A stretch of DNA of 64,000 nt, taken from Pecten maximus. Its lineage: Eukaryota. The DNA is taken from assembly GCF_902652985.1 (NCBI RefSeq), contig NC_047023.1, positions 1,674,001-1,738,000 on the forward strand. Direction: 5' to 3'. The notes beneath the pieces are model-generated. The model ran no database searches. It was not told where the DNA came from and saw only the letters and a program-made list of their open reading frames with translations. Of the stretch, positions 21,496 to 49,197 are shown one piece after another. Both the position numbers and the translations under genes were made by a program. Each line of letters opens with the position of its first letter. The stretch's first letter is position 1.

Positions 21496-22107
21496 CTAGG
21501 ATTTTTTTCATTCGGTCATGTGCTTATTACGGAAAGGCATCCAAGTGTGTAGTTATTCGTAGTAAAGCGATCATGTGTACATGATATGCCACAGTGTCCA
21601 TTTCATTGATGTCACAAAGCTGCTTACGTTTAATGACGGCGGATTTTATTGTACGTGTAATTACTAGCAACTCAAACTTATACACGTGTGCATGTGCTAC
21701 ACGTGCATATACGATCGAGTATATCTTTGGAATCAGGTTTTTTTCTGTCTTTCTCAGTCCCGTCCCGCCACCAGTTGACCACAGGCCAGTGAGACCCGAC
21801 TATGTGTATCAGTTTATGTGTATTCGGATCTATATAGTTTTAATTGTGGGTTAACATACTTCACCCACTCGAGGGTAGGTCCTGATGTTCCTGGGCACCC
21901 GACTGGATCCACCACACAGATCAACTTGCCAGTTACATTACATATATTATATGTATAATATCCTGTAGTTTTCAAACGACAAAGATCACAGCAAGAAATT
22001 ACATTATCTATATATGCATTTCTCGGAGATGTACTGAACGGAACAGGCATAAAGTACAACTGATCGTGTATAAAATGATTAATTTGCATATGATAATTGT
22101 TCTCATA

Positions 22108-22695
22108 TTACATTTATCTACGACTCACTTTATATTTATCTACGACTCATGTTATATTTATCCACGACTCTCACGTTATATTTATCTACGACCCTCATGT
22201 TATATTTATCTACGACCCTCATGTTATATTTATCTACGACTCTCATGCTATATTTATCCACGACTCTCACGTTATATTTATCTACAAACCTCACGTTATA
22301 TTTATCTACGACTCTCACTTTATATTTATCTACGACTCTCACGTTATATTTATCTACGACTCATGTTATATTTATCCACGACTCTCACGTTATATTTATC
22401 TACAACTCTCACGTTACATTTATCCACGACTCGCGTTATATTTATCTACGACTCTCACGTTATATTTATCTACGACTCTCACGTTACATTTATCCACGAC
22501 TTACGTTATATTTATCTACGACTCTCACGTTATATTTATCTACGACCCTCATGTTATATTTATCTACGACTCTCACTTTATATTTATCTACGACTCTCAC
22601 GTTATATTTATCTACGACCTTCACGTTATATTTATCCACACCTCTCACGTTATATTTATCTGCAGCTCACATATATATATCTACGACTCACATTA
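22108..22695. repeat. 24-bp minisatellite (tatatttatctacgactctcacgt)n
   Basis: Directly visible. It accounts for the YIYLRLSR / VIFIYDSH / LYLSTTLT ORFs. Confidence 0.95.
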
Positions 22696-22941
22696 CCATT
22701 GGTGTTTCACCGCTCAGATTTCTCGATTATTTCGATACGATACGAACAGGAAATAACGAACCTATTGTTATATAAATTGACATGATGGAATTATGCGCTA
22801 CTACTCCTATTTGCTTTGTTGAAAAAATGGCTAAGGCTTTCCAGTCTTATTTTTTTGTCTCTAGACTATTTGGAGGTAAAAAAAAATATATCTATTTAAA
22901 ATATATATAATTTTTTTTTTACACAATTCTATGTAGAATCT

Positions 22942-26065: not shown

Positions 26066-26679
26066 GTGACTGGTCAGGATTGGAGCGAGAGTATGCATGG
26101 CAGATGTATCACTGGGAACAAGAAGTCCTGGAAATTCCCTCGGTAGAAGGGCGTATTGACTACATAAAAAAACTCCAGAAAAGCCACAACAAGTACAGGA
26201 TTGATGGCCAGTTTGCTTGGTTCTTTGATGGCAAAAGTCTCGAGCCGCGACTGCTCAATTATCAGTTTGACAAAACGAAGACATTTCCCATTGAAGGTCT
26301 TCCGAGTATATATGATAATGTGGACATTAAAAGTGATTTAGAAGCTCTTACTCCTGTAGTAAAAGACATCATATTAAGTGAGTGTGATAAAGTCTCTCGC
26401 AGATCGTCACTAGCCAACCCTGTTGGACTGAACAAGGAAAAGATTTCTAAATTGTTGATAAAAAGTCTGATTCTAAAGATCCTTTCAAGCCTGTCCTGTA
26501 GTCATTCCCATTTACTTACGGCGGAATTATCCGAGGATGTTTTCCAACAAGCATACTGGGATCGGTATTCTGATAGAGGGCTTCTCCCTGAAAAAGAAAA
26601 ACCTCAGAAAAAAGTGATGAAATATCAGGGAGAATATAAGACAAGTTTTCAACTGAGGACGGAGCTTCCATTACCAGAG
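26066..26679 (+). CDS. MRPS30: MRPS30 exon 2
   Basis: tttaag|GT GAC TGG ... CCA GAG|gtaggt. The translation includes QFDKTKT...GLP, HSHLLTAEL and QLRTELPLPE, and phases are consistent. Confidence 0.88.
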
Positions 26680-27289
26680 GTAGGTCACACTAGACTGGTC
26701 ATATGACCTGGTCCAATTACGCTATTGTCTTCCTACAATGGATGATCATGTATTCTGATACGCTACACCAGTTTTATACTTGATATTTTTCATTTTACCT
26801 TCAGAGTCAAGGTCAGAACATGGTGTCAGAGTTGTCTTGTGAATGGGTTTTGAGGTTATCTGGATGGCACAATATTTTTTTTTTTTTTATGAAATTCTAT
26901 TTACCATTTTATAGTACTATGTAATAACTTAATAACTGTGTAACAGAGTGAATGATTAACTAATTTTAAATCACTGCCTCTGCTAGGGATCAAACTCAGG
27001 ACTTCTGATTTACACTCAACCAATCTAGTTAAAGAGAATTCAAAGATCTTGCCGAAGGTGTGAAAAAAATTGCCCCCCCCCCCCCCCGCAGAGAAGTGTC
27101 ATTTCCGTGTCCATACAATGTAGGAAAATGCATGATTATCTTAATTTATATCACTGTCTCATCAATGGATCATACCAAACTGATTGGGTTAGAGGTCTCT
27201 CTAGCCGAGATGTATATTATGGCTATATATAGTATTTTACCAGAGTTAATTATCATAGTAAGAGTTGATAAGGTTATATTGTGTTACAG

Positions 27290-27824: not shown

Positions 27825-28004
27825 GTGTAAACCGTGGTTCTCCGTGTGAGTTTGGATATTTGTCGGTGGAGACGGTCAACTCCTTCAAATTAGACAAGGC
27901 AGCTGTAGATTATCAGTCCAGTCCTGAAATCATACCAGAACTCTGGAAAGGATTCGCTCTAAGTTCCTCCTTCCTATCTACTGTAGCACAGGCTCACTAT
28001 CAAG
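27825..28004 (+). CDS. MRPS30: MRPS30 exon 4 (GVNRGSPCEFGYLS...VAQAHYQG)
   Basis: PCEFG.LS and AQA.YQG are mL65 motifs. The exon has a tttag acceptor and a G|gtaag donor. Confidence 0.9.
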
Positions 28005-28388
28005 GTAAGATATCACAACAGAGGACACAGGCTTACTATCAAGGTAAGGTATCACAACAGTCGACACAGGCTCACTATCAAGGTAAGATGTCACAACAAT
28101 GGACACAGGCTCACTGTCAAGGTAAGAAATCACAACAGAGGACACAGGCTCACTATCAAGGTAAGATATCACAATAGAGGACACAGGCTCACTGTCAAGG
28201 TAAGATATCACAACAGTTGACACAGGCCCACTATCAAGGTAAGAAATCACAACAGAGGACACAGGCTCACTATCAAGGTAAGATATCACACCAATAGACA
28301 CAGGCTCACTATCAAGGTAAGATATCACAACAGAGGACACAGGCTCACTATCAAGGTATGCTATCACAACAGACGACACAGGCTCACC
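27987..28388 (+). repeat. 39-bp tandem repeat copying the MRPS30 exon-4 end plus splice donor, 10 donors
   Basis: Unit cacaggctcactatcaag|gtaagatatcacaacagagga, with donors after 28004, 28043, 28082, 28121, 28160, 28199, 28238, 28277, 28316 and 28355. Confidence 0.95.
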
Positions 28389-29120
28389 AGTGAAAGATCC
28401 AGGGCGCGGGATGGTTAAAATCCCCCAAAATATACGTTTTGCCCCCATGGCCACTTGCAGAAAATATGTGGGGGCCAATTCACGCACAAATACTAGTGTG
28501 ACCCGCATATGTATCAACATAAAGCGGGTATAAGATGTGTTTAATAATATTTTTAAACATGTTTTTATCAATCAAACGGAATTATAGCAAGTACAATACC
28601 GTATTGGTGTTGTCTTTACAACAAACATGGTTTAGGCAGAAGTCGTAATTAGAGTTACTCCCCTTGAGTCGCAAGAACGCTTAAAAATTTGACGAAAATC
28701 CAAGCGCTTATGTGACCTTTAACAACTCAAACAAACATGGCGGAAGCCACCTCCACACAGAAAAAAATATCACGTTTCTTTAGGACTCACCATCATGATG
28801 TAGAGAGAAGGCCAAATAAAAACACTGAACATAATAAAGACACAGCAGTGGACACAACAAGAAATGATACGAATAAGAAACATTCTGCAAAAAAATGAAA
28901 ACACGATTTCCATGTAGATCTAGTTTGATGTTCATTATACATTAACATTGACTTTGTTTGATCATTTTCAGAATGAAAAATTCTGCATAAAGCATGATAT
29001 TCAGTCTATTAATATTTCCTATTATACAATATAGTAGACAATACAGCAAAAATTTAATTGCAAAACCTTAACTAAGTGCAGTGTTTAAGATTTGTCTAAT
29101 TTTTTTTTTAATTGTTACAG

Positions 29121-34369: not shown

Positions 34370-36299
34370 TCACTTGCCATTGTCCGGGAGGGTGAGGCTG
34401 TAGATTTTTACCTCGCCGTGTTTGTTTCCAACCCAGACTAGACCGTCGTTACCATAGCCTACTGACCAGGGGTGATGGATACCGTCCTCCTTGGTCAGTA
34501 CTGCCAGGAACGTTTGACCAGTTTCGTCGAGAAGCATGATTCTGTGGTTGCTGAAATCCGCAACAAGAATCACGCCCTCGCTATCACAGCATATGCCTCG
34601 TGGACAGAAGCCGTCCGATTTTCTGTTCTTGCTTAGACTGAAATACTCTGTTTCCACATGTCCCTTGGAGTTTAATATCGTCACACAATTCCTCTTCCAA
34701 TCAGATATTGCAATATGTCCAGACTTTGTAGTCGCTAGCCGTGCTGGATACTCGACCAAGGGCGATCCAGCGAAAGACAGAATATTTGGCGTTTCCATTC
34801 GTTTTTCACCGTTCACTATTTTTTTCACGACTCTGTTTTTATGATGATTTTCGTAATCATAAAATGCATTTTTCTCTGTTAAACAAATGACAAGCGCGCC
34901 TTCGTTTTGGTCATACGCGATTCCCCTAGAACACAAATCCGTGTAAGTCAAAAGAGAAGTTTTTAGAGGTGTCGTCCACCATCACAATTTGTCTCGCAGA
35001 GTTACAAGATACATATTTCTTGTTGTCCGGCCCACAGATGATATCGTCCGCGGGAAGGTTCAAGTTTAACTTCTGATGGACCCTCCCCTTGCTGTCATAC
35101 AGCTGAATGATGCCGTCTATCCCTTCTATGACCCAGGCACGACCGTCCGCGACGTACGAGATAGCGGAGACTGGGGCACCAGCCGTCTTCGTGCAGAATT
35201 GGGATATTAGACGTGCTTTTGGCTTTTGAGGGACTGCCGGTCCTAAAAGTCCAAACGAAGGCAGGAATTCTTCCAAAGTCATCACTTTTGGATTAAATTG
35301 AATTCCTTGATTCTTCGGTAAAGATTGGACCGGTCCATCTAGCTTTAAACTTGTCAGTTTCCTTTGTAACTTCAGCCCGCCTTCTACGATTTCCACGTCA
35401 TCTGACTGTTTGACAGCCGCCTGAGATACAAGGTATATATTGGCGAAGGACTGTATGTTGTTTTCCAATTTTCTACCGATGTTTTTGACGGGAGCTATGT
35501 CTTTCCGGGAGTCTTCCCGGACTTGCTTCAACATAAACGTCTTCGTATCCTCGACCAGCGCGTGCCATACTTTGGCATGGTTGTTTATTTCCCTCATCGC
35601 CACTTCCTCTAGAGTCTCCAGTCTCTTGATTTGTTGTATTGCTTCTGTTTTTCTATCGTTCATCCAAAACAAATGATTGGCGAAGTCTTCAGATTCTAAC
35701 AGCCTCGCAAGTTGTTCACGGAATTTGTCGGACATTTCCGTTGCAACTCGGGACGTATGTAGCTTATGTTTCGTCATATTGCAGTGCTGACATACAAGCT
35801 TTTCACAGTCGATACAATAATATGTCTTCTTCTCATCCACGTGAATATCACAGTAAACATCTCGTGTCAACTTTCCTTGGAGGTGGTCCTTGCTGATCGT
35901 CGCAATGTGGTGTTCACGAGTCGTCTTAATGTTGTTATGATATTCAAAACATGTGTCGCAAAAATCTTGCGCGCACTCGACACATCTTCCTGTCGCGTTT
36001 TTGTCGTCATTACATACGTCACAGATAATACCTACAGTGGATGTCGACAGATTCAGGTACAGGTTTCTCTTGATGCCCTCAGCGCCCCGTTGTGGCGTGC
36101 GAGTGGCCGTATCACACAACGGACAGTCAATCGTCCCGTCAGGACAGACAGAGTTGATGTACCCGTCCAGACAGGACTTACAGTAGACATGACAACAGTC
36201 CAGCTCACGTGGGTCAGTGAAATCGTTACGACATAAATAACAGCGAGTGTTCTTTAAAAGGCCATATAGCGCGCGATTCCCTTCCTGTCGTCCAGCCAT
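34370..36299 (-). CDS. TRIM-NHL E3 ligase-like protein (RING, B-box1, B-box2, coiled coil, NHL repeats; TRIM2/3/56/71-like), intronless CDS with one apparent +1 frameshift near 34960
   Basis: RING CYLC...CCHVYCKSC...CPLC, B-box1 CDVC...CVECAQDFCDTC..H, B-box2 CDIH...CIDCEKLVCQHC...H, and NHL motifs PRGICCDSEGVILVADFSNHRI and YPARLA...IAISDW. The span is 1930 nt (3n+1). Confidence 0.88.
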
Positions 36300-37229
36300 G
36301 CTAGTTAGCGATCAGTGTAGGGTTATGACAGTAAGTTCTGAGTTCTCTCCCGATAGCTCTCATGTACATCTCCAATACACCGTTATCTAACGAATCCGTA
36401 TTGGATTCAGATTTGCGTAGAGTTAGCTCACACAACCTGAAAGTTAACAAGAAAAAGATCAACGGCTGAATCAGAACCATCGACACCGTCTGTAAATAAA
36501 ATGTCCACTTGCCGGATCTCTGATTGTGTAATTCTGTTCTACCAGGAATACTCCCCACTAGTTGTTATACCAGACGGATTAACGAAATCCAATAGTTCTA
36601 TTCATGTGTTTATTGACAACACAGCACGGGTTACCTGTTATCGAACAGGTAAACACTGATTAGGAAATTGATTGGACAAACAGGATGCACTTGTGTATAA
36701 ACACTTAGCATCAATATTCATAAACAAACATCACATTTTAAGCTACTTTAGAAATCACTGGACTATGTTATACTATTGCAGTACTCTCGTCACCATGGCG
36801 ACCAGGGTGACGAGATCCATTTCTAAGTTCAATTATTTTTTATTGAATGCATTAATTGGTGCGTGATTTCGACCTATGTCGTTTTACAGGTAATGGTGTG
36901 ATGTATTTTGAGTCTGAATAAGCACCAGCCAGTTTGTGTTAGATCAATAAATCTGTAGCTACAAGTCTCTAGTACACGCCCCAGCTCCCGCGTAAAAACC
37001 GATTCCTGATAAGCCATGGTCTGTATAGGAGAAAAGTAATTTCGTCATTTATGTAATAAGTTGTTAGTATCATTGCCGATGTCATCATCGTTGTCATCGT
37101 CGGCCCAGTTAATCGTTTATGAATTGATCTTTCAATTGAATTGACCCCAACCCCAACCCTTACCCTAATCAATGGGCTTCTATTTACTACCCTGTCGTCA
37201 CGTGAAAAACTTGGTTGAAATTATTTAAC

Positions 37230-37605
37230 CGATAGCTCCAACGAATTGCCCGATAGCACCAATGTCTTACTCATTAGCTCAAAAGACTTACACGATGACA
37301 CAAAATATTACACAATAGCTCAAAATTCTTACATGGAACAAAAGTTTGCACGGTAGCTCAAAGTGCTTACATGAAACTCAAAAGTTTACACCGTGGCTCA
37401 AATTGCTAACAAGAAACTCAAAAGTTTGCACGGTAGCTCAAAATGCCTACATGAAAGTCAAAAGTTTGCACGGAAGCTCAACATACTTAAATGATAGCTC
37501 AAAAGTTTACACGGTAGCTCAAAATACTTACATGATAATTCAAATGACTTACCTATTGGTCCAAAAATAAGCGGCTGATAGCTGAAACAAATTATCTGAT
37601 CGCTC
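37230..37605. repeat. degenerate ~21-bp array (tagctcaaaa...tac(a/t)c), probably internal to a non-autonomous element
   Basis: Recurrent (gg)tagctcaaaa and aactcaaaagtttgcac motifs. Confidence 0.6.
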
Positions 37606-37883
37606 AACAGACAACCCATTTATATCCTTGTCAGTTGTTGTAAGGTATTTCAGTGCAATTTCAATATATACAATGTTTTTTCTCTCACCATTCAAAATTT
37701 ATATTCTCCATATCGATTTGTTAATAAAAGTTCATTGCGTTTGACAGATATCCATAAAAGTATCCATTATTTACATATTGGACCGATTTGTTGACATAAT
37801 GGACATTCATAGCTAATTATAGTACTAATGCATATAGAACAATGGGTGAGCTATTATAACACTGAAACCCGCTGGTCGATTTT

Positions 37884-38242
37884 TATTGGATACTATTAGA
37901 CCACAGGGCCGCATTACAGCTGCAGAGCCATGTGCGTGATACAGGCCCATTGGGCCTCTTGTTATTGGATAATATGAGATCACAGGACCACATCACAGCT
38001 GTAGAGCCAGGTGAGCGATCAAGCCCTTTGGGCCTCTTGTTATTGGATACTATGAGACCACAGGACCACATCACAGCTGTAGAGCCAGGTGAGCTATACA
38101 GGCCCATTGGGCCTCTTCTTATTGGATACTATGAGACCATAGGACCACATCACAGCTGTAGAGCCAGGTGAGCGATCAAGCCCTTTGGGCCTCTTGTTAC
38201 AGGATACTATGAGATCACTGGACCACATCACAGTTGTAGAGC
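37884..38242. repeat. ~78-80-bp tandem repeat with two alternating variants
   Basis: ggcctcttgttattggatactatgagaccacaggaccacatcacagctgtagagccaggtgagc is followed alternately by gatcaagccctttg and tatacaggcccattg. Confidence 0.85.
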
Positions 38243-38389
38243 TTTTATGGGTTTGCGTTTTTAAGTTAAGTGAAGTTAAGTTAAGTTTATTTTCTGATAC
38301 AGGATCAAACAAGATCCTCTTCATCGGTCTCAAAAACATGAAATTTAAATATTTGAAATATAGATAATTATGACATTACATGTATTATT

Positions 38390-39518
38390 AATGTATCTCA
38401 GATCTATTATTGTATAGGAGTTCCTGGTTCTCCCGGTGCTCATCCAGTCTATTTTTAAATGTATTTACATTTGGCGCTAAAACTACATTTTCAGGAAGAT
38501 TGTTCCATATGTTTACAATGCGCATGGCGAAGAAGTTCTTGCGAACATCTATTCTAGTATGTTGTGGAAACAATTTCAACGTGTCACCTCTTATTCCCTG
38601 TCTTTGTGAGTGGTCTTTCCACATCTTGACAAAATCCGTTGCACAATCATCGTAAATACTGTGTGTTATCTTGTATACTCAATCATGTCGCCTCTTTGTC
38701 TTCTGTAGCTAAGAGGTGGCAATTTGAGCTTCTTTAGTCGATCCGGATATGATAACTCGCGAAATCCAGGCATCTGTTTCGTAGCCCTCCTTTGCACTGC
38801 CTCAATCATATCGATATGTTTAAGTTTGAAGGGATGCCATACAGTGTATAACCGTGAAAAATTATGTTCGTTTAGAAATTGAAAAGATCGCCTTATGACT
38901 GCAAACATAGAGTTTGCTTTCTTTACTTGGCTACTAATTTGATCTTCAAATGCCAGACATCTGTCTACTATTACTCCTATGTCCTTTTCCTTTTCCACTT
39001 CTTGTAAAGGTTGGCCCTCTATGTGGTATGATCTTTCTCCACATGGTCGGCCTATGTGCATAGATTTGCACTTTAAGGGTTGAAATTTTAAGAGCCATTC
39101 ATTGCTCAAATTTGAAAGTTTGTTTATATCTTCCTGTAGGATATCAACATCAGCTTTACCACGTATACTTTTGAAAACTTTGGTATCATCTACGAAAAGG
39201 TTTGCATCCGACTGTACTATATCAGGGAAATCGTTTATATATATCACAAACAATGTTGGTCCTAGTACTGATCCTTGGGGCACTCCAGATGTTACGTTTG
39301 TCCATTTTGAGGTTTTCTCCGTTCAGCGATACCCGTTGCTTCCTGTCGGAAATGAAACTGGCCGTCCAATTTGTGATTTCGCCACTTATTCCATACGATG
39401 ACATTTTACTAAGAAGCCTTTTATGGGGAACGGTATCAAATGCTTTTTGGAAGTCCATATAAATACAGTCAATAGCAACTCCATTATCTAGCAGCTGGGT
39501 CCATTCATCTAATACTTT
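38390..39518 (-). mobile_element. CR1-clade LINE, 5'-truncated RT fragment with frameshifts
   Basis: DFQKAFDTVPH, PQGSVLGP.LF.IYIND, F(V)DDTK, EKDIGV, VQRRATK, RRQRGDMIE and RKNFFAMRIVNIWNNLP are CR1 ORF2 C-terminal motifs, spread over three frames. Confidence 0.92.
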
Positions 39519-39613
39519 GTTTTTGTTCAGTCCTACCTCAAATTCATTTAAGACCTTACAATTGTGACCTGGCCACGTAAGTTACTAACCATATACACTG
39601 TAACTTGAATCAC

Positions 39614-39687
39614 AGGCACTCGTCTCGTCTGTCAATACGCCCAGTAGGGTTATATTTTGGGCGTATTGACAGACGAGGCGAGCGCCT
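39614..39687. repeat. short GC-rich hairpin (30-bp arms, 14-nt loop)
   Basis: aggcactcgtctcgtctgtcaatacgccca pairs with tgggcgtattgacagacgaggcgagcgcct. Confidence 0.85.
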
Positions 39688-40141
39688 GAGGATGTGCTTG
39701 AACAGCTGAAGCATAATGACAAAATGCATCAGGCGAAAACCTTCAACTTTGAATATTTTCAGAATACACCGTATCTCGTCGTAAAATCATCTAACATTGT
39801 TGGAATACATTATGAGAAGAACTATATAGTTTGATATATTTTGTCCATCAAAACTCAACAACCACACGTAATATATATACATATTAATCAGCCCTCATAC
39901 AACTGTACATACAAAATAACAATGGAAATCCCTGTTGAAAATGAACTTTTTTATTTTGTCTTTATCGTTTATACAACCTTGACGTAATTAACAACTTTGG
40001 GACACATGCGCTCACGATATGCTTCCCAGTTTTGAAGGAAGGAACTGTTAGCAACGAAACATGTACTCCCATCCAATTAAAAAAAAAAATTATAACAACT
40101 TTGTCTACAACAACATATTTTCAATGTAATAAGGATAGTGT

Positions 40142-40832
40142 CTACAATGGTTCATCCTTCACCACGATTTGTATTTCGCCCTCTAACGATTCCATAGGGT
40201 CGTTAGCCGTATCACCATTACTTGTAGTGTCTGTCGTTTCCGAGAAGTCGACAGACACGTCTCCTGGGGTGTGGAAGAGCATGGTGGGGGAGACAGGAGG
40301 AATTGTTGGAGGCCGAGGACCGATTTTACAATACTGAGTCATATCTACACGGAGAAATGTTAACAGCTGTTGAAGTTTTTCGCCAATATCCGATACAGGT
40401 TTTCTTTTGAAGCGCCAGTAAAATTTCCTGTTCGTGGGATGTTTAACCTGCTCAGCACTTCCAAGTCCAAGTTCCTGACATTTCTGGAAGAAGAGCGCGG
40501 ACGCCCATACTGGATGTCTATTGTTAGTACCTTGGAGTTTGACGGGGGGAGTAATGGACTTTTGTGAAGCGGTTGTGGCCGAAACACCATGCCCGTCATC
40601 GAAACATTCTAGAAGTCGTTTAATTCGTTTTGCATGCACTGATACAAACATCTGTTTGTCCATGACGACGAAATCCGCTGTTTGCGTCTCCTCCTGTCCT
40701 AAGTCCTCTGTGAGCGGCTGGTCGGCCCAATCTTCGGACGTTGACGCCGACACGTTGGAATTTTCAGATAAGTATATGATCTGGTTCGAATGGTGCATTC
40801 TCTGTTGTTGTTGTTGTTGTTGCTGCTGCTGC

Positions 40833-40866
<34 letters not shown>

Positions 40867-41961
40867 GCTGCTGCTGCTGCTGGTGAAGAATGTGCTGTTG
40901 CTGGTTGTGGTTCAGCTGTTGGTGAAGTTTTGGTTGCTGAAGCTGACGCAGAGCATCTTTTACATTAACCCACTTCTTCCCGCTACTTCCGGAATAGTTA
41001 CACATCCCAAAACTAGCACCGGAGCCGAGCATCAACGTGAGTTTCTGGTCCACAAAATACTTACATAGATCTATGGCACGACAGAGAGTATCTCTGTCTA
41101 CTGTCAAATCCCACTGGAACACCTTGTTTTCGGCCTGTTGTTTGGAGAACCTAAAGGCGTTCACAAGTGCCTTTAGAATACCCGCCACGCGTACGATTTG
41201 TCCCAAGGACTTTTCAATGACAATCCGTTTGTTCTTGTCATGGTCTAACTGGGACATCATACTTATCCACTCGTTGTCATGACAACTGGACAGCTCTTTC
41301 CACGCCTCTGTTGAGAACGAATACTTCCTTTGTTGTAAATGGTAAGTGTGCAAGGTTTGAAAGATTGATTTAAACGATGGTGTATCTAACGGCAAAGGGT
41401 GCGAGCTCGCCATCGGTGGATAATCCCGGTCTGGTGAACATGACACTAAACACCTACTTGCTATTTCCACCAACCTACTGCTATGCATGTCCATAATGTA
41501 ATCAGGTGTTGCAAACCCGGTATGATTATAACAGGTTGATTCTAGGATGTGCACGTCCCCAGAGGAAACACTGAACTTTGGCGCACCGTCATAAAGTTCA
41601 AACACTTTCTGTTGTGCCTCCTCAGAATCGATATCTAGACATTTGTGTAAATGTTTTATATTTTCTAGAATGCTTAAAATTTGACCCTCATTTTTGTCAA
41701 GAACATCGTCCAATGATTGCATCCCCATCGCTCCCGCCAGAATCTGGGGAGCAGACGACTGGCTGTTATAACTTGATGAAGTTGGGCGAGAGAGATGCCA
41801 CTGACGGGTCTGTTCACGTTGAATTTCTATCAATGGCGCCATGACCAGCTTTAGAGCCGCCGTCTTCTTGGTACCTGAGCCGGCCCCAACCATGGTCCAT
41901 ACAATCGGCGGCTCTGTCCATGTTTCATTTACTTTGATGCACGTCTTGTTCCCCATCAACG
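40142..41961 (-). CDS. exon 2 of a DUF3987/YfjI-like P-loop protein with a Q27 tract and a basic C-terminal domain
   Basis: Long open frame with acceptor gttgcag|CG. Motifs include W.EPPIVW.MVGA.SGTKKTAAL (Walker-A-like), ELYDG, GFATP, KSLGQIVRVAGIL and AIDLCKYFVDQK. PolyQ spans 40802-40882, and there is a minus-strand AATAAA at 39950-39955. Confidence 0.75.
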
Positions 41962-42618
41962 CTGCAACATAATCAATAACGCATTCATTATAAGTTTTGG
42001 TTTGACATTTATAGTCAATATACTTGCCATCTACTTCAATTATTGACGTTCCCTATTACTTATGAGGCCGAATATACATTTACCAGACTGTATGACGTCA
42101 TCAACAAAACCTCAGCAGGATGATGCTGTTGATAACAACTGACAAATAACTCTTATAATCAAACTACCAGTGTTACGGTAATATAAATATGAAAAGTTGG
42201 AATCTCTTGGCATATATAGTCAATATGAATTACACGACTTTAGAAGTAAATATACAACACTGTGTTTACAGCAATATGGTGCAAATGGTTGTCTGAAAAT
42301 TGTGTTCATCGCCTTTGGAAAAGTCTTATCAAGTCAAAGAATGATTTACTACCAGACAGTAAATATAAGTCAGTGACCAAGACGTAACACAACACTAATA
42401 CTCGGTTAAATTATCATTAATGTCCGCATGCGCAGACTAACACAGTCACTATCGAAGACATAACTTTTATCAAAGATAAAAAAAAACTTTCCTTTCGTAC
42501 AATATACGGAGTATATACCACTATCGGACACTACAAATTATACTCATCTCACAATACACGAAGAATCACTATTTGGTCATACAGAGTATATTCATGATAA
42601 TCTCACAATCTCATTAAG

Positions 42619-42722
42619 ATTAGACTTGTAACTTCCGCTCCTCTGCGATACTCTACAATACACTACAATACAAGTATTGTATATCTAGTATATCGTAGAA
42701 GAGCGGTAATTACAAGTCTAAT
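42619..42722. repeat. imperfect inverted repeat (MITE relic)
   Basis: attagacttgtaacttccgctcctctgcgata pairs with tatcgtagaagagcggtaattacaagtctaat. Confidence 0.6.
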
Positions 42723-42928
42723 TTTGATTACATTGGATCGTCTCACAATACACGAAGCATTACTATCTGAGTGACAATAAACAGGGTATTAATCTTACAC
42801 TATACCTGTTTGAAGTATAACTATCTGATAAGTAAACTCATCTGACATTATGCACAAGTATAGCACTATGCTTTACATACAAGCATAATACCCTACTGAC
42901 AAACAAAGTATCAGCCTTCGATGATTAA

Positions 42929-45330
42929 ACAAGGTGTAATATGACTATATACAAGGTGTAATATGACTATATATAAGGTGTAATATGACTATATACAAGG
43001 TGTAATATGACTATATACAATGTATAATATGACTATATACAAGGTGTAATATGACTATATATAAGGTGTAATATGACTATATACAAGGTGTAATATGACT
43101 ATATATAAGGTGTAATATGACTATATACAAGGTGTAATATGACTATATATAAGGTGTAATATGACTATATACAAGGTGTAATATGACTATATACAAGGTG
43201 TAATATGACTATATACAATGTATAATATGACTATATACAAGGTGTAATATGACTATATACAAGGTGTAATATGACTATATACAAGGTGTAATATGACTAT
43301 ATACAATGTACAATATGACTATATACAAGGTGTTATATGTCTATATACAAGGTGTAATATGACTATATACAAGGTGTAATATGACTATATACACCGTGTA
43401 ATATGACTATATACAAGGTGTAATATGACTATATACAAGGTGTAATATGACTATATATAAGGTGTAATATGACTATATACAAGGTGTAATATGACTATAT
43501 ACAAGGTGTAATATGACTATATACAAGGTGTAATATGACTATATATAAGGTGTAATATGACTATATATAAGGTGTAATATGACTATATACAAGGTGTAAT
43601 ATGACTATATACAATGTATAATATGACTATATACAAGGTGTAATATGACTATATATAAGGTGTAATATGACTATATACAAGGTGTAATATGACTATATAT
43701 AAGGTGTAATATGACTATATACAAGGTGTAATATGACTATATATAAGGTGTAATATGACTATATACAAGGTGTAATATGACTATATACAAGGTGTAATAT
43801 GACTATATACAATGTATAATATGACTATATACAAGGTGTAATATGACTATATACAAGGTGTAATATGACTATATACAAGGTGTAATATGACTATATACAA
43901 TGTACAATATGACTATATACAAGGTGTTATATGTCTATATACAAGGTGTAATATGACTATATACAAGGTGTAATATGACTATATACACCGTGTAATATGA
44001 CTATATACACCGTGTAATATGACTATATACAAGGTGTAATATGACTATATACAAGGTGTAATATGACTATATACAAGGTGTAATATGACTATATACAAGG
44101 TGTAATATGACTATAAACAAGGTGTAATATGTCTATATACAAGGTGTAATATGACTATATACAAGGTGTAATATGACTATATATAAGGTGTAATATGACT
44201 ATATATAAGGTGTAATATGACTATATACAAGGTGTAATATGACTATATACAAGGTGTAATATGACTATATACAAGGTGTAATATGACTATATATAAGGTG
44301 TAATATGACTATATACAAGGTGTAATATGACTATACACATGGTGTAATATGACTATATACAAGGTGTAATATGACTATATACAAGGTGTAATATGACTAT
44401 ATTCACCGTGTAATATGACTATATACACCGTGTAATATGACTATATACAAGGTGTAATATGACTATATACAAGGTGTAATATGACTATATACAAGGTGTA
44501 ATATGACTATATACAAGGTGTAATATGACTATATACAAGGTGTAATATGACTATATACAATGTATAATATGACTATATACATGTATACAAGGTGTAATAT
44601 GACTATATACAATGTATAATATGACTATATATACAAGGTGTAATATGACTATATACAAGGTGTAATATGACTATATACAAGGTGTAATATGACTATATAC
44701 AAGGTGTAATATGACTATATATACAAGGTGTAATATGACTATTTCTACCACAATACGCCGTGTTATTCAACTCTCAGACCATCAGTTAATCATCACAGCT
44801 GTTGATTAACAAAACAATCTGTTTATACCACACGTGGTATAAACTCTGCACGTATTTCGATTGGCTAACACGGTGAACTTTGACCCAAGCTGCAATTGTT
44901 ATTGACGTCATCAATAATCTAATGACGTCACATCACCGGGTCCCGGACGTCACCGGAACACTTTATTTGCATACGCGAAATTATACTTTGCCACGTTTCC
45001 CTTTGATTCAAGCCGATATTATTGTGGTAGAAACAGGTCACACGACTCGAAATTGTTGGATATGGAATTTATTTCACACTCGTAAGTTATTTTTTAAAAG
45101 TTGCAAAAAACACTCGCTAAAGCTCGTGTCTTTTGTAACTTTAAAAAAATAACTTACTCGTGTGAAATAAATTCCATATCCAACAATCACTCGTTGTGTA
45201 ACCTCTATATATACAGGGTGTAATATGACTATATATAAGGTGTAATATGACTATATACAATGTGTAATATGACTATAAGGTGTAATATGAAATATTATAG
45301 GTATATTATGATGTAATATGACTATATGCA
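42929..45330. repeat. 22-bp minisatellite (caaggtgtaatatgactatata)n in the intron of the DUF3987-like gene, interrupted at ~44743-45208
   Basis: Directly visible at 42929-44742, and resumes at ~45209-45330. Confidence 0.96.
44743..45208. mobile_element. non-autonomous element with a long internal hairpin, inserted into the 22-bp array
   Basis: attgttggatatggaatttatttcacactcgtaagttatttttt... pairs with ...aaaaaataacttactcgtgtgaaataaattccatatccaacaat (45053-45187). It also carries gattggcta and two TGACGTCA motifs. Confidence 0.75.
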
Positions 45331-45385
45331 AATTCACATTGTAGTGTTATATGATGGACTAAGATAATATTTTAAACATATTTAC

Positions 45386-45596
45386 CTGCACAACAAGAGA
45401 GGAATGGGAGAAATATGTGGTCATCAGGACAGCCGAGGGCTACAGCGTTGTTGTGGACAAGTCTCTGTATAGGCAGGCCACATATCAGTCCGATATCAGG
45501 TAAAGCCTGCCGCTGTGCTGCCTGGTACAGACTATAGCCTTCGTCGTTGGTGACTTGTGTCGAATGGTTGTCCGATTCTTGCGTGTAGTTGTTCAT
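45386..45596 (-). CDS. exon 1 of the DUF3987-like gene (MNNYTQ...ALGCPDDHIFLPFLSCCA)
   Basis: ATG at 45596. The phase-1 donor GCA G|gtaaat joins exon 2 to give ...SCCAALMGNKT..., for a spliced CDS of 2031 nt (676 aa). Confidence 0.75.
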
Positions 45597-45761
45597 GGTT
45601 CACACCGACTTAATAGTGTCCGTTCAGATTTAACTCGGTCGACTGACATCTAACATAACTTAACAAGTGGACAACATGGCTACCGTTAAACACGGCCGAG
45701 TTACACACACATACGTATTACAACTAGCTCCACTTGCACACACTAGGAAACAAGAGTGTTC

Positions 45762-45769
45762 TATTTATA
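45762..45769 (-). promoter_or_regulatory. candidate TATA box (TATAAATA) of the DUF3987-like gene
   Basis: GGGTTATAAATAG on the minus strand, about 170 bp upstream of the ATG. Confidence 0.4.
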
Positions 45770-46129
45770 ACCCTCATTGTTCAGCAAGCTGTCTATCGAC
45801 AAGCCATCTATAGTCTGTTTCATAAATGTTGTGTGTATAGGATTTTGTTACACTGTACAAACGTTCGGAGGCGATAATATACAAACCAAATGTTCCGGAT
45901 TAAGAAGTACACCCCCGATTTACCGGAAGATGTATTTTAGTTATCAGTAAGCTGCAACCACACTTAAGTTAGTTTGTAATGCGTTAAGAATAATCTTTTT
46001 AATAAGCTGACATTATCTCTCCGAACACGTACTTAAGTAAGTTGACATAAACAATTAACTGCTGAATGCTATATGGCAAGCCAAGTAAGCATTTATTCAG
46101 AGCAATATGTTGATCCAGTATTTAACCAA

Positions 46130-46685
46130 ATTAGTTAAGATATCTCATTTACTTTATCAGATATCTTTTATACTTTTCTATAAAATGTATCTTATGTAAG
46201 ATATCTTTTATATAAGAAATAAATTAAGATATCTCTTAAAGTATATAGGCTATCTTATTTATCATACATATGTATATCTTATAAACAATATTAAATGAAA
46301 TATCTTTTATATTACACAAGATCTTATACAGTAAACAATATTAAATAAAATATCCTTTATATTATATGAGGTATATCTTAAAAACAAAATTAAATAAAAT
46401 ATCTTTTATATTATAATAAGATATCTTATAAACAATATTAAATGAAATATCTATTATATTATATGAGATATCTTAAAAACAAAATTAAATTCAATATCTT
46501 TTATATTATTATAAGATATCTTATAAACATATCAAATGAACTATCTTTTATATTATATGATATATATTATTAACTGTATGTAATGACATATCTTTTATAT
46601 TATATAAGATATCTTATTAACAAAATCAAAGGGACATCTTTAATATTATACAACATATATTTCAAACAAAATTAAGGGGGATATC
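46130..46685. repeat. very AT-rich degenerate ~47-bp repeat (tatcttttatattatataagatatcttataaacaa...)
   Basis: Recurrent aaatatcttttatattat...gatatctta motifs. Confidence 0.7.
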
Positions 46686-47712
46686 ATATGAAGCACGAGA
46701 TTTGAATTTGAGATAATAAACCCTCCCCTGCAACGCCCGGAAGTCAGCGATACATATGCATACACCAGGTAATCCTGTTAGAAATAACAAATAATGAGAA
46801 CGGAATACATGTACACTTTTAAGATGAATTTATAATTAACAGTTTCTGGGTATCAGCTCCCCACCGATTGTGAAACTCAATGGATTAACGATTTGAGGGT
46901 GACTAACTCCCAGTTAATTTATAATTAACATTTTCTGGAAATTAGCTCCATGTTAATTATCAAGCAAATTCAAAATCAGCAATCAAATATCAAGCTACAC
47001 ATGCATTGGAATTTAACAAATCAAAGTTCATATATAAATCACAATAAATGATATGTCCACATTAGTTGAGGCTTATGAAAATAAGCCAGGTTTAAATGAA
47101 CAAACATAGATATATACTACCTGATTAAAAATAGTTATATATATAGAAGTTGATGAAATCAGAAGTTATAGGATTTTTTAAAGATATAATGTAATGAATA
47201 ACTTCTTTTGGATCTAGTATGTACACAATCAAGATACAATCCTAAATATATAGTAACCATCAGTAGAGCTCTCTGATTGGTTAAGAAAATTAGAGGGGAC
47301 GCCATTGTGTTTACAGCCTCAGTAACAGAAAGACGTCTCAAATGTGTCTCAAACAAATCTTCATAATCTGGATCAAATCATAGCAATATAACATCTTAAC
47401 GGTATTATTATGCAGATGGACGATATTCTGAACATGTCATATGTGCTGTGAACGAGGATACTTCTCTAGTGTGTGAATCAAAAAGACTTGCAGTCATAGA
47501 CAACTTTCTAAACAATCCTTTGTTTACGTATGGAATATTGAACGTGAATTGTCAATAAGTCTGTCGGAACTCTAAAAATAGTTAAGGACCCTGGACTGAA
47601 CAGACGGAATTTATTGCCAAAGATATGTGTGTTGTTTCCCTACCATCGCACTTAAATTGAGTTTGCGTTCGGTAGCCCAGGAGGGATTTGAACTGTAGAT
47701 TTAGCTCCTACC

Positions 47713-49182
47713 ATTGCTAGCCGTAGATCCAGATCTACAACCAGAAACAATCCATGGGACTCCTCAAACCCTGCAAATTGGACAGTGCCGCAATTAAGGA
47801 CAGAATTGGAGAAAATAGGGATTATTGCGCTTAATACGGGCATCACCAAGACTGGTTTAAAAAATATGTATTTAGAAAATGCGGGACGCAGCGCGAGAAG
47901 ATCAAACTCCGTCATCACGAGTCAAACAAATTCCCAGCCCGAGGACGTGCACGAAATCGATGGTCCGATCGCTTACCCTATGCAGACCGAACCCACGAAC
48001 AATTACGGGCCCGACCCTGCAAGGACAGACGGCGGACTACATTGCGACGCGGAGGTGCGACCAGCTAACAGCACGCCAACAAGTCCGCCACTATCGCGCA
48101 GTAATACCAGCCCACCGGAAACAGCGGCTCAAACAGAAAACAACATGGCGGCGCCCAGTGCTCAAAATACGGACGTCATTCAAAGTATGCTGGCATCTAT
48201 GCAGAGCATGCAACAGACCGTCATGGGTCTTCAACAAACCGTAATGACACTGATCGGGGCGCGAGACGACCAACGAGGAATACTAGCGAGACATGACGCA
48301 ACAGAATCCGGCTACAACTTATCAACAGCGTACGCCGCGATGAGACGTGACACAGAGGGAACCTCACAAACGGACAGAGTACAAGGTGGGTACACAGCTT
48401 GTGGCATATCATCTGAAAGTATTCCCCATCTTGATATTGTGTCCGACGCTAATAAAAAGAAAATTCTTGAGGGTCGTTACGTTAATTTGGCCTCGCTCCC
48501 CATACCAAAGTACGACACTGAACGGTCAGAAGAACACCAACGTAGGGGCATATACATTAACACGAACGACAGTGAAGACCAGAGACTAAACAAATCACTG
48601 ACCATTTCGGAATTTATTACTGCTTTTGGCAAGTTTAAACGGATAATGTGTGGGAAATTCCCAGAAAGAAGAGGAGAGCTCGAGATCTACGAGGCCCACA
48701 TCATAGAAATATCCAACATATATGGCCAGAAATTCTATGATTATCATTGCCAGTTTGCCCTAAAAGCAGCCACAGCACTGAGGGATAATAACCAGAAAGT
48801 TAATTGGGGCCTGAAAGATAATGGACTCCTGAGCATGGTGGTTGGCAACGCTAAAGTGAACGCATGTCAATTATGTTCGTCCACAACTCACTCCACATCA
48901 TTCTGTCCCCAACAAAAGAATAGGCGGTCAGGGAAAAACTCACAGCAACAATATAACGGCTCACCACAAGGATCGAACTCGAAAGACACGGACAAATATG
49001 GACGTCCAAAAATCAAAATAGATGGAGTTGAAGTTTGCAATAACTTCAATGATGGGAAATGCCACTATGATACAGGATGTCATTTCAAACACATCTGCCA
49101 CACATGTAAAGCTACCAGCCATGGAGCCAAGTCGTGCCGTAAGAACTTAAATGCAAGATCCCGCAGTGACGAGGCCCAATGA
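47713..49182 (+). CDS. gag-like ORF1 with an N-terminal helix-extension-helix (SAP/LEM-like) motif and C-terminal CCHC/CCCH zinc fingers; the probable start codon reads ATT
   Basis: NWTVPQLRTELEKIGI...LKNMYLEN, CQLCSSTTHSTSFC and CNNFNDGKC....CHFKHICHTC....HGAKSC. The in-frame acc-ATT-gct at 47713 sits in a Kozak-like context. Confidence 0.8.
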   Translation: MASRRSRSTTRNNPWDSSNPANWTVPQLRTELEKIGIIALNTGITKTGLKNMYLENAGRSARRSNSVITSQTNSQPEDVHEIDGPIAYPMQTEPTNNYGPDPARTDGGLHCDAEVRPANSTPTSPPLSRSNTSPPETAAQTENNMAAPSAQNTDVIQSMLASMQSMQQTVMGLQQTVMTLIGARDDQRGILARHDATESGYNLSTAYAAMRRDTEGTSQTDRVQGGYTACGISSESIPHLDIVSDANKKKILEGRYVNLASLPIPKYDTERSEEHQRRGIYINTNDSEDQRLNKSLTISEFITAFGKFKRIMCGKFPERRGELEIYEAHIIEISNIYGQKFYDYHCQFALKAATALRDNNQKVNWGLKDNGLLSMVVGNAKVNACQLCSSTTHSTSFCPQQKNRRSGKNSQQQYNGSPQGSNSKDTDKYGRPKIKIDGVEVCNNFNDGKCHYDTGCHFKHICHTCKATSHGAKSCRKNLNARSRSDEAQ

Positions 49183-49197
49183 CTACCCCATCAACCA

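What the first reader, a model, noticed from the sequence alone, without database searches (positions are those of the whole stretch)
40142..45596. Spliced, polyQ-bearing animal gene built on a phage/plasmid-type DUF3987 (YfjI-like) helicase fold with a degenerate ATPase site
Seen: a clean 2-exon, 676-aa CDS with a candidate TATA box and polyA signal, no lesions and no flanking element termini. The N-terminal ~390 aa carry an ordered motif series (GCP...IFLP.L...AALMG; W.EPPIVW.MVGA.SGTKKTAAL; GQILSILEN; ELYDG; GFATP; SRCLV; KSLGQIVRVAGIL; YFVDQK). This is followed by Q27, an acidic/Ser linker and a basic C-terminal domain (KRIKRLL...FFQKCQELGLG...RKFYWRFKRKP). Knowledge: DUF3987/YfjI domains are P-loop modules typical of primase-helicases of prophages and plasmids, and I recognise this motif order from that family. 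Inference: the Walker B position reads ILEN rather than ..DE, so the protein may be a pseudo-ATPase. With the polyQ tract and a possible winged-helix tail, it looks like a mobile-element helicase domesticated as a nuclear DNA-binding or regulatory protein. I know of no characterised animal member.
Basis: partly seen in the sequence, partly recalled or inferred. Interest (0 to 1): 0.75.

Follow-up and report, generated by a model that had tools for sequence, protein, structure and literature searches.

The report
Phage-type helicase gene kept by animals
A mollusc gene that is transcribed and spliced encodes a protein descended from the DNA-unwinding motor of bacterial viruses and plasmids; related invertebrates have kept it although the residue that burns ATP is replaced, and I found no study of what it does.

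Summary
Window 40142-45596 (-) is a two-coding-exon, 676-codon gene. The GT-AG junction 45386/41961 appears in assembled transcripts of two runs.

- **Copy number:** it is single-copy in the 918-Mb genome, with one distant intact paralogue.
- **Helicase core:** exon 2 passes Pfam DUF3987 (60.7 bits, cut-off 27). The family profile aligns with prokaryotic primase-helicases at 99.9% probability. A model of the closest full-length relative matches phage DUF3987 proteins (E 6.7e-16) and the MCM AAA+ domain (Z 18).
- **C-terminal domain:** the basic tail folds as a winged helix at moderate Z of 6.2.
- **ATPase site:** Walker A, the arginine finger and a sensor-2-like arginine are normal for the family. 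Walker B reads EN where prokaryotes have DE.

New here: this is not a private domestication. It belongs to an old family with members named from molluscs, nemerteans, a hemichordate, sea urchins and scorpions. Most members carry a C-terminal psi-K-x-E motif.

The function is untested. My best guess is a nucleotide-gated, DNA-binding nuclear factor. No paper or earlier scan note covers animal members.

The parts
45764..45769 (-). Candidate TATA box (TATAAA), 173 nt upstream of the ATG
   Evidence: Motif position. The transcript start was not mapped. The X1 contig reaches at least about 45640 if it is colinear with the genome.
45386..45596 (-). Coding exon 1 (211 nt, 70 codons plus 1 base). Its N-terminus is variable. 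It then encodes the conserved helix motif GCP..hIFLPFLSCCA, which starts the helicase-type domain.
   Evidence: Residues 37-70 of relative P0001 align with prokaryotic DUF3987 proteins. The exon is joined to exon 2 in the X1 and X5 contigs.
41962..45385 (-). Intron (GT...AG, 3424 nt) holding a 22-bp-period minisatellite at about 42794-44721
   Evidence: No contig of 4 runs lies in the laid part 41967-43020, apart from a 32-letter piece.
40142..41961 (-). Coding exon 2 (605 codons plus stop)
   Evidence: Covered by contigs of X1, X5, X8 and X10 at 95-100% identity.
41015..41961 (-). DUF3987 / MCM-like AAA+ core and lid (exon-2 residues about 1-315)
   Evidence: Pfam PF13148 E 1.8e-16. hhalign gives 99.9% probability against prokaryotic DUF3987. 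A proxy model of P0001 gives Z 18.0 to Mcm5/SsoMCM and E 6.7e-16 to phage DUF3987 proteins.
41861..41884 (-). Walker A, AGSGTKKT (exon-2 residues 26-33). This form is normal for the family.
   Evidence: Prokaryotic members read G-x-S-G-T-x-K-[ST].
41660..41680 (-). Walker B, ILSILEN (residues 94-100). E99 sits at the Mg-binding Asp position and N100 at the catalytic Glu position.
   Evidence: The hhalign register is E to D and N to E. In clade A the first position is E in 22 of 22 rows. The second is N in 12, D in 5 and R in 5.
41453..41455 (-). R169 in the S-R-C-L-V motif, the likely arginine finger just before strand beta-5
   Evidence: R in 21 of 22 clade-A rows and 18 of 29 other animal rows. 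It aligns with the prokaryotic G..R.L...PP motif. The resemblance to the MCM SRFD motif is recalled.
41189..41191 (-). R257 in GQIVRVAG, a sensor-2-like arginine in the lid helix
   Evidence: This is the only invariant column of the 51-row alignment.
40652..41014 (-). Disordered Q-rich then acidic/Ser linker. It includes Q27 (40802-40882), coded by alternating CAG and CAA blocks.
   Evidence: pLDDT is below 50 for the equivalent stretch of the P0001 model.
40280..40651 (-). Basic winged-helix-like domain (pI 10.1). A long, highly conserved H2-H3 loop reads PPV..GTNNRHPVW, and the wing reads RKFYWRFKRK. This is the most conserved part of the protein.
   Evidence: Model of the window's own residues has pLDDT 84.6. 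The VIA top rows are mostly winged helices, best Z 6.2. It is 120 of 122 identical to P0001, against 231 of 308 for the N domain. pI.
40145..40279 (-). Acidic disordered tail ending in V-K-D-E-P-L. The psi-K-x-E motif lies at 40151-40162.
   Evidence: The motif occurs in the last 25 residues of 27 of 51 family rows (20 of 22 in clade A). It occurs in 18 of 1366 other 25-residue windows. Reading it as a SUMO acceptor site is recalled knowledge.
39950..39955 (-). Candidate poly(A) signal AATAAA
   Evidence: The X5 contig reaches 39983. The transcript end was not mapped.

Best explanation
SHOWN. This is a real, transcribed, spliced, single-copy host gene. From N to C it encodes four parts:
1. A helicase-type module homologous to DUF3987, the superfamily-6, MCM-like AAA+ replicative helicases of phages, plasmids and integrated elements. 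No primase is attached.
2. A disordered Q-rich and acidic linker.
3. A basic winged-helix-like domain, which is the most conserved part.
4. An acidic tail ending in a psi-K-x-E motif.

The gene belongs to a family in which every named member carrying the C-terminal domain is an animal. The family has several old clades, and this genome holds two of them. Within molluscs the gene tree follows the classes.

The P-loop, the arginine finger and a lid arginine are kept. The Walker B pair D-E of the prokaryotic enzymes is E-N here. Only 2 of 51 animal rows still have D-E.

INFERRED.
- A mobile-element helicase gene was captured once in an early animal. It lost its primase partner and gained introns, a low-complexity linker and a likely SUMO site.
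- With Asn in place of the catalytic Glu, the protein most likely still binds ATP but hydrolyses it slowly or not at all.
- It would then work as a nucleotide-gated, probably ring-forming, DNA-binding nuclear factor and not as a processive helicase.
- The winged helix would supply the conserved DNA or partner contact.
For: Gene and expression.

Copy number:
- A protein search of the own genome gave only itself plus one 27%-identical locus.
- A DNA search gave 1 match, itself.
- The PF13148 profile hit 3 stretches in 2 loci.
- Paralogue B has 2 coding exons with no frame break.

Family membership:
- Pfam scored 60.7 bits against a cut-off of 27.
- hhalign of 51 animal rows against 5 prokaryotic rows gave 99.9% probability, E 3.9e-34, over 338 columns.
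- BFVD gave 58 hits at E<=1e-3, and the named rows shown are almost all phage DUF3987, primase or helicase proteins.
- PDB Foldseek gave 108 hits at E<=1e-3, and the rows shown are all MCM.
- VIA gave Z 18.0, rmsd 3.7, 270 aligned residues to Mcm5 and SsoMCM.

Winged helix.

Orthologues and breadth:
- 31 proteins matched the C-terminal domain, and 30 of them carry PF13148.
- The representative search gave 145 hits.
- The local HMM found the C-terminal domain in 77 of 177 sequences.
- In the tree, animals separate from prokaryotes at 98, and mollusc clade A is supported at 100.

Motif states.

The psi-K-x-E tail motif.

Helicase activity of a DUF3987 protein needs Walker A and Walker B (DExx): passages of PMC11724360. 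DUF3987 is described as SF6, MCM-related, with a C-terminal wHTH: passages of PMC4889955.
Against: - Nothing here shows ATP binding, lack of hydrolysis, oligomerisation, DNA binding or nuclear location.
- Conservation of the Walker A K/T, the arginine finger and the lid arginine could equally mean a working ATPase. Five of 22 clade-A rows have Asp at the catalytic position.
- Nine of 22 clade-A rows, all named ones heterobranch gastropods, have Arg for the Walker A Lys. That argues against even conserved ATP binding there.
- The winged-helix match is only Z 6.2, with none at Z 8 or above. Foldseek's best E for it is 0.075.
- Sequence homology of this tail to prokaryotic DUF3987 tails was not detected (probability 1.8%).
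- The full-length model is of relative P0001 (75-98% identical by domain), not of the window's protein.
- The junction was seen only in Logan contigs of two runs whose RNA nature is a guess. The two runs recorded as RNA cover exon 2 but not the junction.
- The tree is the quick one, with 5 prokaryotic outgroups. A single capture is therefore suggested, not proven.
- Names are known for a minority of the 145 hits.
- Within-species variants are 6 synonymous and 6 non-synonymous. That is only a mild sign of constraint.
Confidence: 0.7

Rival explanations
1. The protein is still an ATP-driven helicase or translocase. E99, or the Asp found in some orthologues, would support catalysis. It would serve a replication or repair task, possibly with a separately encoded primase-polymerase.
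For: The Walker A Lys-Thr, the arginine finger and the lid arginine are conserved: 13, 21 and 22 of 22 clade-A rows. Prokaryotic DUF3987 proteins partner with primases.
Against: The catalytic Glu position is N, D or R within one orthologue clade, so it is not held constant. D-E survives in 2 of 51 animal rows. The sensor-1-region Gln of the prokaryotic tGgIQP motif is lost in all 22 clade-A rows. Mutating Walker B abolished helicase activity in AgaPH. A scorpion-containing clade (Centruroides, P0092, P0121) has no recognisable P-loop yet keeps the architecture.
Confidence: 0.22
2. It is cargo of a transposon or endogenous virus and not a host gene.
For: The ancestry is from mobile elements. 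The gene sits between a reverse-transcriptase fragment (38666-39283) and a retroelement (47785-51806).
Against: There is one DNA copy in 918 Mb and only 2 DUF3987 loci. No bracketing repeats were found. The flanking retroelements are on their own and encode RT, not this family. Orthologue clades follow gastropod subclasses and mollusc classes. The winged helix is 120 of 122 identical to that of the nearest relative.
Confidence: 0.04
3. It is bacterial or phage contamination, or a recent horizontal transfer that was mis-modelled as a spliced gene.
For: The best structural matches are phage proteins.
Against: A GT-AG intron is removed in transcripts. The gene has a polyQ linker and animal neighbours: RING-B-box-NHL and MRPS30. 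Identity to prokaryotic proteins is only about 20%. tblastn found no phage match at E<=1e-3.
Confidence: 0.01

Closest known systems
Prokaryotic and phage DUF3987 (PF13148) helicases. Examples are the PriCT-DUF3987 helicase AgaPH (PMC11724360, passages read) and the phage SF6 helicases of Kazlauskas et al. 2016 (PMC4889955, passages read).
   Same: Profile and profile-profile homology run over the whole N-terminal module, including the part coded by exon 1. The same ordered motifs are present. Phage DUF3987 proteins are the best structural matches. A winged helix sits at the C-terminus in both.
   Different: There is no fused or adjacent primase. Walker B reads EN where the prokaryotic proteins have DE, and the Gln of the tGgIQP motif is lost. 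A roughly 120-residue disordered Q-rich/acidic linker is inserted before the winged helix. The gene has an intron, a psi-K-x-E tail and animal host-gene behaviour. The tail domain shows no detectable sequence similarity to prokaryotic tails.
MCM2-7 and archaeal MCM (AAA+ domain plus C-terminal winged helix)
   Same: The AAA+ fold matches at Z 18.0, rmsd 3.7, 270 residues. Model residues 37-378 correspond to SsoMCM 290-602 and yeast Mcm5 364-694. The order is AAA+ then winged helix, and one alignment reaches the Mcm5 C-terminus (row 8kg6_5).
   Different: There is no MCM N-terminal OB/zinc domain and no Pfam MCM hit. Sequence identity is 12-14%. A profile of the family finds no PDB sequence at E<=1.
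Degenerate MCM-type paralogues of animals such as MCMDC2 (recalled, not tested here)
   Same: An MCM-like AAA+ core with altered catalytic motifs is kept as a conserved host gene.
   Different: The ancestry differs: eukaryotic MCM duplication there, against mobile-element DUF3987 here.

Membership tests
DUF3987 (PF13148), SF6-type helicase family | Profile match above Pfam's gathering score | tested here: met
   60.7 bits against a cut-off of 27, E 1.8e-16, in 2 stretches. hhalign gives 99.9% probability over 338 columns against 5 prokaryotic members.
DUF3987 (PF13148), SF6-type helicase family | Walker A of the form G-x-S-G-T-x-K-[ST] | tested here: met
   The window reads A-G-S-G-T-K-K-T. 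Four prokaryotic members have A, M, S or R before the Lys. The consensus rests on these few sequences. The alignments in the supplements of PMC11724360 and PMC4889955 were not seen.
DUF3987 (PF13148), SF6-type helicase family | Walker B D-E (DExx), required for helicase activity in AgaPH | tested here: not met
   The window reads E-N, with the register taken. D-E is present in 2 of 51 animal rows. The activity requirement comes from passages of PMC11724360.
DUF3987 (PF13148), SF6-type helicase family | Arginine finger and lid (sensor-2-like) arginine | tested here: met
   R169 and R257 of exon 2. The lid arginine is invariant in 51 of 51 rows. The functional labels are inferred from position.
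DUF3987 (PF13148), SF6-type helicase family | MCM-like AAA+ fold | tested here: met
   Tested on a proxy model of relative P0001 (pLDDT 79.1). Z 18.0 to MCM. E 6.7e-16 to phage DUF3987 models.
DUF3987 (PF13148), SF6-type helicase family | [quoted passage not shown] | tested here: met
   Met at fold level only. The window's own tail was modelled at pLDDT 84.6 with H-S-H-loop-H-S-S order. The VIA top rows are mostly winged helices, best Z 6.2 and none at 8 or above. Sequence homology to prokaryotic tails was not detected.
DUF3987 (PF13148), SF6-type helicase family | Fusion to, or adjacency with, an AEP or DnaG primase | tested here: not met
   Neither exon has a primase domain. The neighbouring ORFs are RING-B-box-NHL, RT fragments and MRPS30.
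DUF3987 (PF13148), SF6-type helicase family | ATP-dependent 5'-3' DNA unwinding | not testable with these tools
   This needs purified protein.
Host gene of mobile-element ancestry (domesticated gene) | Low copy number without element termini | tested here: met
Host gene of mobile-element ancestry (domesticated gene) | Orthologues inherited vertically, with conserved sequence | tested here: met
   Clade A has 18 rows at support 100. Caenogastropods and heterobranchs are each supported at 100 (quick tree). The winged helix is 120 of 122 identical to that of the nearest relative. Codon-level dN/dS and synteny could not be tested because no orthologue DNA was available.
Host gene of mobile-element ancestry (domesticated gene) | Transcribed and spliced | tested here: met
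   The evidence is contigs only, so no expression level, tissue or transcript ends are known.
MCM family (PF00493) | MCM profile match and N-terminal OB/zinc domain | tested here: not met
   No MCM family appears in the Pfam scan at E<=1. The structural match covers the AAA+ domain only.

The most novel reading that the evidence does not exclude
An early animal captured a phage or plasmid replicative helicase once. Its descendants form an unstudied family found in several invertebrate phyla. In this family the motor has become an ATP-gated, ring-forming DNA-binding switch. A near-invariant winged helix and a terminal SUMO site tie it to a conserved nuclear task, such as control of replication origins, genome defence or transcription.
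Probability: 0.3. Interest if true: 0.8.

Novelty: new variant of a known kind. Interest (0 to 1): 0.62.

Why it matters
DUF3987 helicases are described only from phages, plasmids and integrated elements of prokaryotes. All 13 papers that mention the family in the searched library deal with those. One of them notes that such SF6 helicases were not found in eukaryotic viruses.

A conserved, expressed animal family built on this module would be an old case of a mobile-element replication protein turned into a host protein. Its catalytic glutamate is replaced, its winged helix is almost frozen and it carries a likely SUMO site. It also offers a natural series of Walker A and Walker B states (DE, DD, ED, EN, ER, and no P-loop at all). 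That series could be used to ask what an MCM-like ring does once it stops being a motor.

The claim is directly testable with recombinant protein and with gene knock-down in tractable molluscs.

Tried and rejected
- **Profile search with the 51-row alignment.** Only 4 proteins were scored at E<=1e-5 among 8000 capped candidates, so it added nothing on breadth.
- **The search for related loci with A1.** It answered that no stretch was conserved enough. A 9-row alignment (A4) then found 4 phage-type contigs out of 7 pattern matches. They match only the P-loop region, residues 2-64.
- **tblastn against 50,697 phage records.** No match at E<=1e-3.
- **PDB sequence search with the family profile.** 0 hits at E<=1.
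- **PHROGs and NCBIfam.** Only weak rows appeared. The best relevant one is phrog_2373, a DNA helicase, at E 0.023.
- **hhalign of animal against prokaryotic tails.** Probability 1.8%, so homology of the tails is not claimed.
- **Atlas search.** It confirmed DUF3987 for the N domain at 0.96. For the tail it gave only leads under 0.85, with the nearest named cluster MCM5_C at 0.75.
- **Careful tree.** It did not finish, so I report the quick tree.
- **Rejected readings.** Transposon cargo, contamination and membership of the MCM family are rejected for the reasons given under the rivals and the membership test.
- **Joined protein.** The two exons were never joined. Exon 1 and exon 2 were searched apart. 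The full-length fold used the natural relative P0001.
- **Supplements not seen.** The alignments in Supplementary Figure S2D of PMC11724360 and Figure S4 of PMC4889955 could refine the family consensus, which I took from five sequences.

Full report
**1. The observation**

The minus strand of 40142-45596 carries an ATG ORF that starts at 45596 and a 605-codon ORF at 40142-41959. Exon 1 ends in cag followed by gtaaat (donor after 45386). Exon 2 follows ttgcag (acceptor before 41961). The junction is in phase 1 and reads C-C-A-A-L-M-G. The exon lengths are 211 + 1817 = 2028 nt, or 676 codons, and 39001-47000 holds no N.

The Q run is exactly 27 residues (40802-40882). It is coded by alternating CAG and CAA blocks. 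TATAAA lies at 45764-45769 and AATAAA at 39950-39955. These are candidates only.

**2. Transcription and splicing**

Twenty listed runs from 7 studies hold the exon-2 stretch, and 4 of them are recorded as RNA.

- Contigs of X1 (1037 nt) and X5 (1290 nt) match up to 41966. They then run on for 250 and 208 letters.
- The printed 30-letter consensus of those letters is identical to window 45391-45420, which is unique in the window.
- 41962-41966 equals 45386-45390, so exon 1 is joined to exon 2. Only the 45386/41961 placement obeys GT-AG.
- No run has a contig in 41967-43020, apart from a 32-letter piece.
- X8 and X10, which are RNA on record, cover exon 2 and the 3' UTR but not the junction.

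These are assembled contigs. They therefore show presence, but not expression level, strand or transcript ends.

Relative P0001 (658 aa, on a 2056-nt Logan contig) is colinear across the same junction.

**3. Copy number and surroundings**

- A protein search of the 918-Mb genome found the gene itself and one locus at 27% identity.
- A DNA search found only the gene itself.
- The Pfam DUF3987 profile hit 3 stretches in these 2 loci.
- The second locus (G000:C8:31038656-31042547, minus strand) is 76-83% identical to an Argopecten irradians protein. It has two coding exons without a frame break, and its intron sits at a different place, near residue 290.
- No repeat pair brackets the gene in 37000-48000. 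The intron holds a 22-bp minisatellite.
- The neighbours are a RING-B-box-NHL gene, a reverse-transcriptase fragment, a retroelement with RT, and an MRPS30 exon. None is a primase.

**4. What the protein is**

*Sequence evidence.* Exon 2 passes Pfam DUF3987 (E 1.8e-16, 60.7 bits, cut-off 27). Exon 1 alone hits nothing. PHROGs and NCBIfam add nothing solid.

A 51-row alignment of the animal family aligns with five prokaryotic DUF3987 primase-helicases at 99.9% probability (E 3.9e-34, 338 columns). The aligned range starts inside the part that exon 1 encodes.

Instead I folded the natural relative P0001 with this alignment.
- The model has pLDDT 79.1. It is ordered over 18-380 and 480-600 and disordered over 382-477 and 605-658.
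- Against viral models, the best matches are phage DUF3987 and primase-helicase proteins (best E 6.7e-16, 58 hits at E<=1e-3).
- Against the PDB, 108 chains match at E<=1e-3, and the rows shown are all MCM subunits.
- VIA-align gives Z 18.0, rmsd 3.7 A, 270 residues. Model residues 37-378 correspond to the AAA+ domain of Mcm5 and SsoMCM.
- A profile of the family finds no PDB sequence at E<=1.

This agrees with the literature passages I read. DUF3987 proteins are described as SF6 helicases distantly related to MCM. They are often joined to primases and carry a C-terminal wHTH (PMC4889955). One such protein, AgaPH, is a 5'-3' helicase that loses activity when Walker A or Walker B (DExx) is mutated (PMC11724360).

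**5. The ATPase site**

Four prokaryotic members read as follows:
- Walker A: G-x-S-G-T-x-K-[ST]
- Walker B: h-h-h-h-x-D-E-L
- Sensor-1 region: tGgIQP
- Arginine finger region: G..R.L...PP
- Lid: SKL.gY..R.AL

The window reads AGSGTKKT, ILSILEN, TGFATP, SRCLVSCSP and KSLGQIVRVAG.

Counts on the alignment:

| Position | Clade A (22 rows, window included) | Other animal rows (29) |
|---|---|---|
| Walker B, first | E in 22 | D 11, E 12, other 6 |
| Walker B, second | N 12, D 5, R 5 | D 15, N 6, K 3, E 2, S 2, Y 1 |
| Walker B pair D-E | 0 | 2 |
| Walker A Lys | K 13, R 9 | K 17, R 8, other or gap 4 |
| Arginine finger | R 21 | R 18 |
| Lid arginine | R 22 | R 29 |

All the named rows with Arg at the Walker A Lys position in clade A are heterobranch gastropods. 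The lid arginine is the only invariant column of the whole alignment. A scorpion-containing clade has no recognisable P-loop at all.

The position that does the chemistry drifts, while the scaffold and the tail stay fixed. This is why I favour a function that does not depend on ATP turnover. It is an inference. In AAA+ proteins, replacing the Walker B Glu with an uncharged residue classically keeps binding and blocks hydrolysis (established knowledge, recalled).

**6. The tail**

The window's own last 170 residues, folded with 41 rows, give pLDDT 84.6. The order is helix, short strand, helix, a 17-residue loop, helix and a beta-hairpin.

Against 48,161 chains, 60 score Z>=5 and none Z>=8. Most of the top 50 rows are winged-helix proteins or winged-helix domains: MarR/PadR/ArsR-type regulators, TFE, Z-alpha, ESCRT-II, SelB and O-methyltransferase N-domains. 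The best is Z 6.2, rmsd 3.1, 67 residues. Foldseek's best is a MarR protein at E 0.075. I therefore accept the fold but not more.

Sequence homology to the prokaryotic tails is not detectable (probability 1.8%).

This domain is basic (pI 10.1). It is also the best conserved part: 120 of 122 residues are identical to P0001, against 231 of 308 in the N domain.

The linker is Q-rich and then acidic. The pure Q27 run is not shared with P0001.

*New observation.* A [VILMF]-K-x-E motif lies within the last 25 residues in 27 of 51 rows. In clade A it is 20 of 22, and the two rows without it look truncated. Elsewhere in the same proteins it occurs in 18 of 1366 windows of 25 residues. The motif fits the SUMO-acceptor consensus (recalled) and so suggests a nuclear protein.

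**7. Family and history**

- The C-terminal domain alone finds 31 proteins at E<=1e-3 among 289 candidates, and 30 of them carry PF13148.
- The N domain finds 5 among 5460 candidates in the word-indexed search.
- The exhaustive representative search finds 145 at E<=1e-3, of which 26 are at E<=1e-10 and 5 at E<=1e-30.
- A local HMM finds the tail domain in 77 of 177 stored sequences. Many of the rest are fragments.

Named members:
- Bivalves, many gastropods, Octopus and a chiton, which form clade A.
- Argopecten, Tegillarca, Solemya and Haliotis, which form clade B.
- Two nemerteans (Lineus and Tubulanus; Tubulanus has two genes).
- The hemichordate Ptychodera.
- Two Diadema sea urchins.
- Two Centruroides scorpions.

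Names were looked up for 30 clusters only. Ten of them carried animal names. One was a Sedimentisphaerales bacterium whose protein matches only the P-loop region.

The quick maximum-likelihood tree has 46 rows (the careful search did not finish). It separates animals from 5 prokaryotic rows at support 98. Clade A is recovered at 100, with caenogastropods and heterobranchs each at 100, and clade B at 99. This fits vertical descent and one old capture, but the outgroup sample is small.

Twelve coding variants in the contigs split into 6 synonymous and 6 non-synonymous.

**8. Verdict**

The gene is a host gene of mobile-element helicase ancestry. It has an altered Walker B, a winged-helix tail and a low-complexity linker. 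It is better described as one member of an old animal family than as a local domestication.

I found no paper on animal members:
- 'DUF3987': 13 papers, all on prokaryotes or phages by title and abstract.
- 'PF13148': 2 papers.
- 'YfjI': 62 papers, of which 15 were listed.
- Two combined-term searches gave 2 and 0 papers, none relevant.

The scan's earlier notes hold nothing on DUF3987. Databases already label some members 'DUF3987 domain-containing protein'. The presence of the domain in animals is therefore on record, but its meaning has not been worked out.

Noticed in passing
window 42794-44721 (intron): A minisatellite with a 22-bp period. There are about 75 or more register-shifted copies, 94-97% alike in the core. 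It fills over half of the intron and blocked read laying.
   Followed up: partly
G000:C8:31038656-31042547 (-); loci L003, L004: This is the only other DUF3987 locus of the genome. It is an intact paralogue of clade B, 76-83% identical to an Argopecten irradians protein. It has two coding exons, and its intron is at a different position (near residue 290).
   Followed up: partly
proteins P0010, P0011, P0013, P0016, P0021-P0023, P0025, P0029: In these nine clade-A rows the Walker A lysine is arginine (G-[ST]-R-R-S). All the named ones are heterobranch gastropods. A scorpion-containing clade (P0050, P0092, P0121) has no recognisable P-loop yet keeps the tail domain.
   Followed up: partly
window 47785-51806 (+): Three consecutive long ORFs of a retroelement. 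The middle one hits Pfam RVT_1. The third has no Pfam hit but looks like a tyrosine recombinase to me (recalled motifs), which would make the element DIRS-like.
   Followed up: partly
window 34370-36299 (-): A RING-B-box ORF and an NHL-repeat ORF lie on the same strand and overlap by 26 nt in different frames. This could be one TRIM-NHL-type gene with a frameshift or a short intron.
   Followed up: no
window 38666-39462 (-): A fragment of a non-LTR-type reverse transcriptase (RVT_1, profile positions 119-194 only) lies about 700 nt downstream of the gene's 3' end.
   Followed up: partly
window 26080-26706 (+) and 27978-28571: An ORF matches mitochondrial ribosomal protein S30 (PDCD9, E 4.3e-12). 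An earlier scan note (s1-787470) describes tandem repeats with splice donors nearby, at 27987-28388.
   Followed up: no
window 27-1918, 12986-13525, 22066-22785: Long ORFs made of tandem peptide repeats in several frames and on both strands. These are satellite-like DNA, not genes, by appearance.
   Followed up: no
protein P0022 (Biomphalaria glabrata) and P0016 (Elysia marginata): Source names for these orthologues are 'tigger transposable element-derived protein 2' and 'K Homology domain-containing protein'. Neither name fits the DUF3987 plus winged-helix architecture. They are probably automatic names or fused gene models.
   Followed up: no
ESM Atlas result: One look-alike DUF3987 cluster (81 members) is 65% eukaryotic, with Rotifera the commonest phylum. 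This is a lead to further animal or horizontally acquired members.
   Followed up: no
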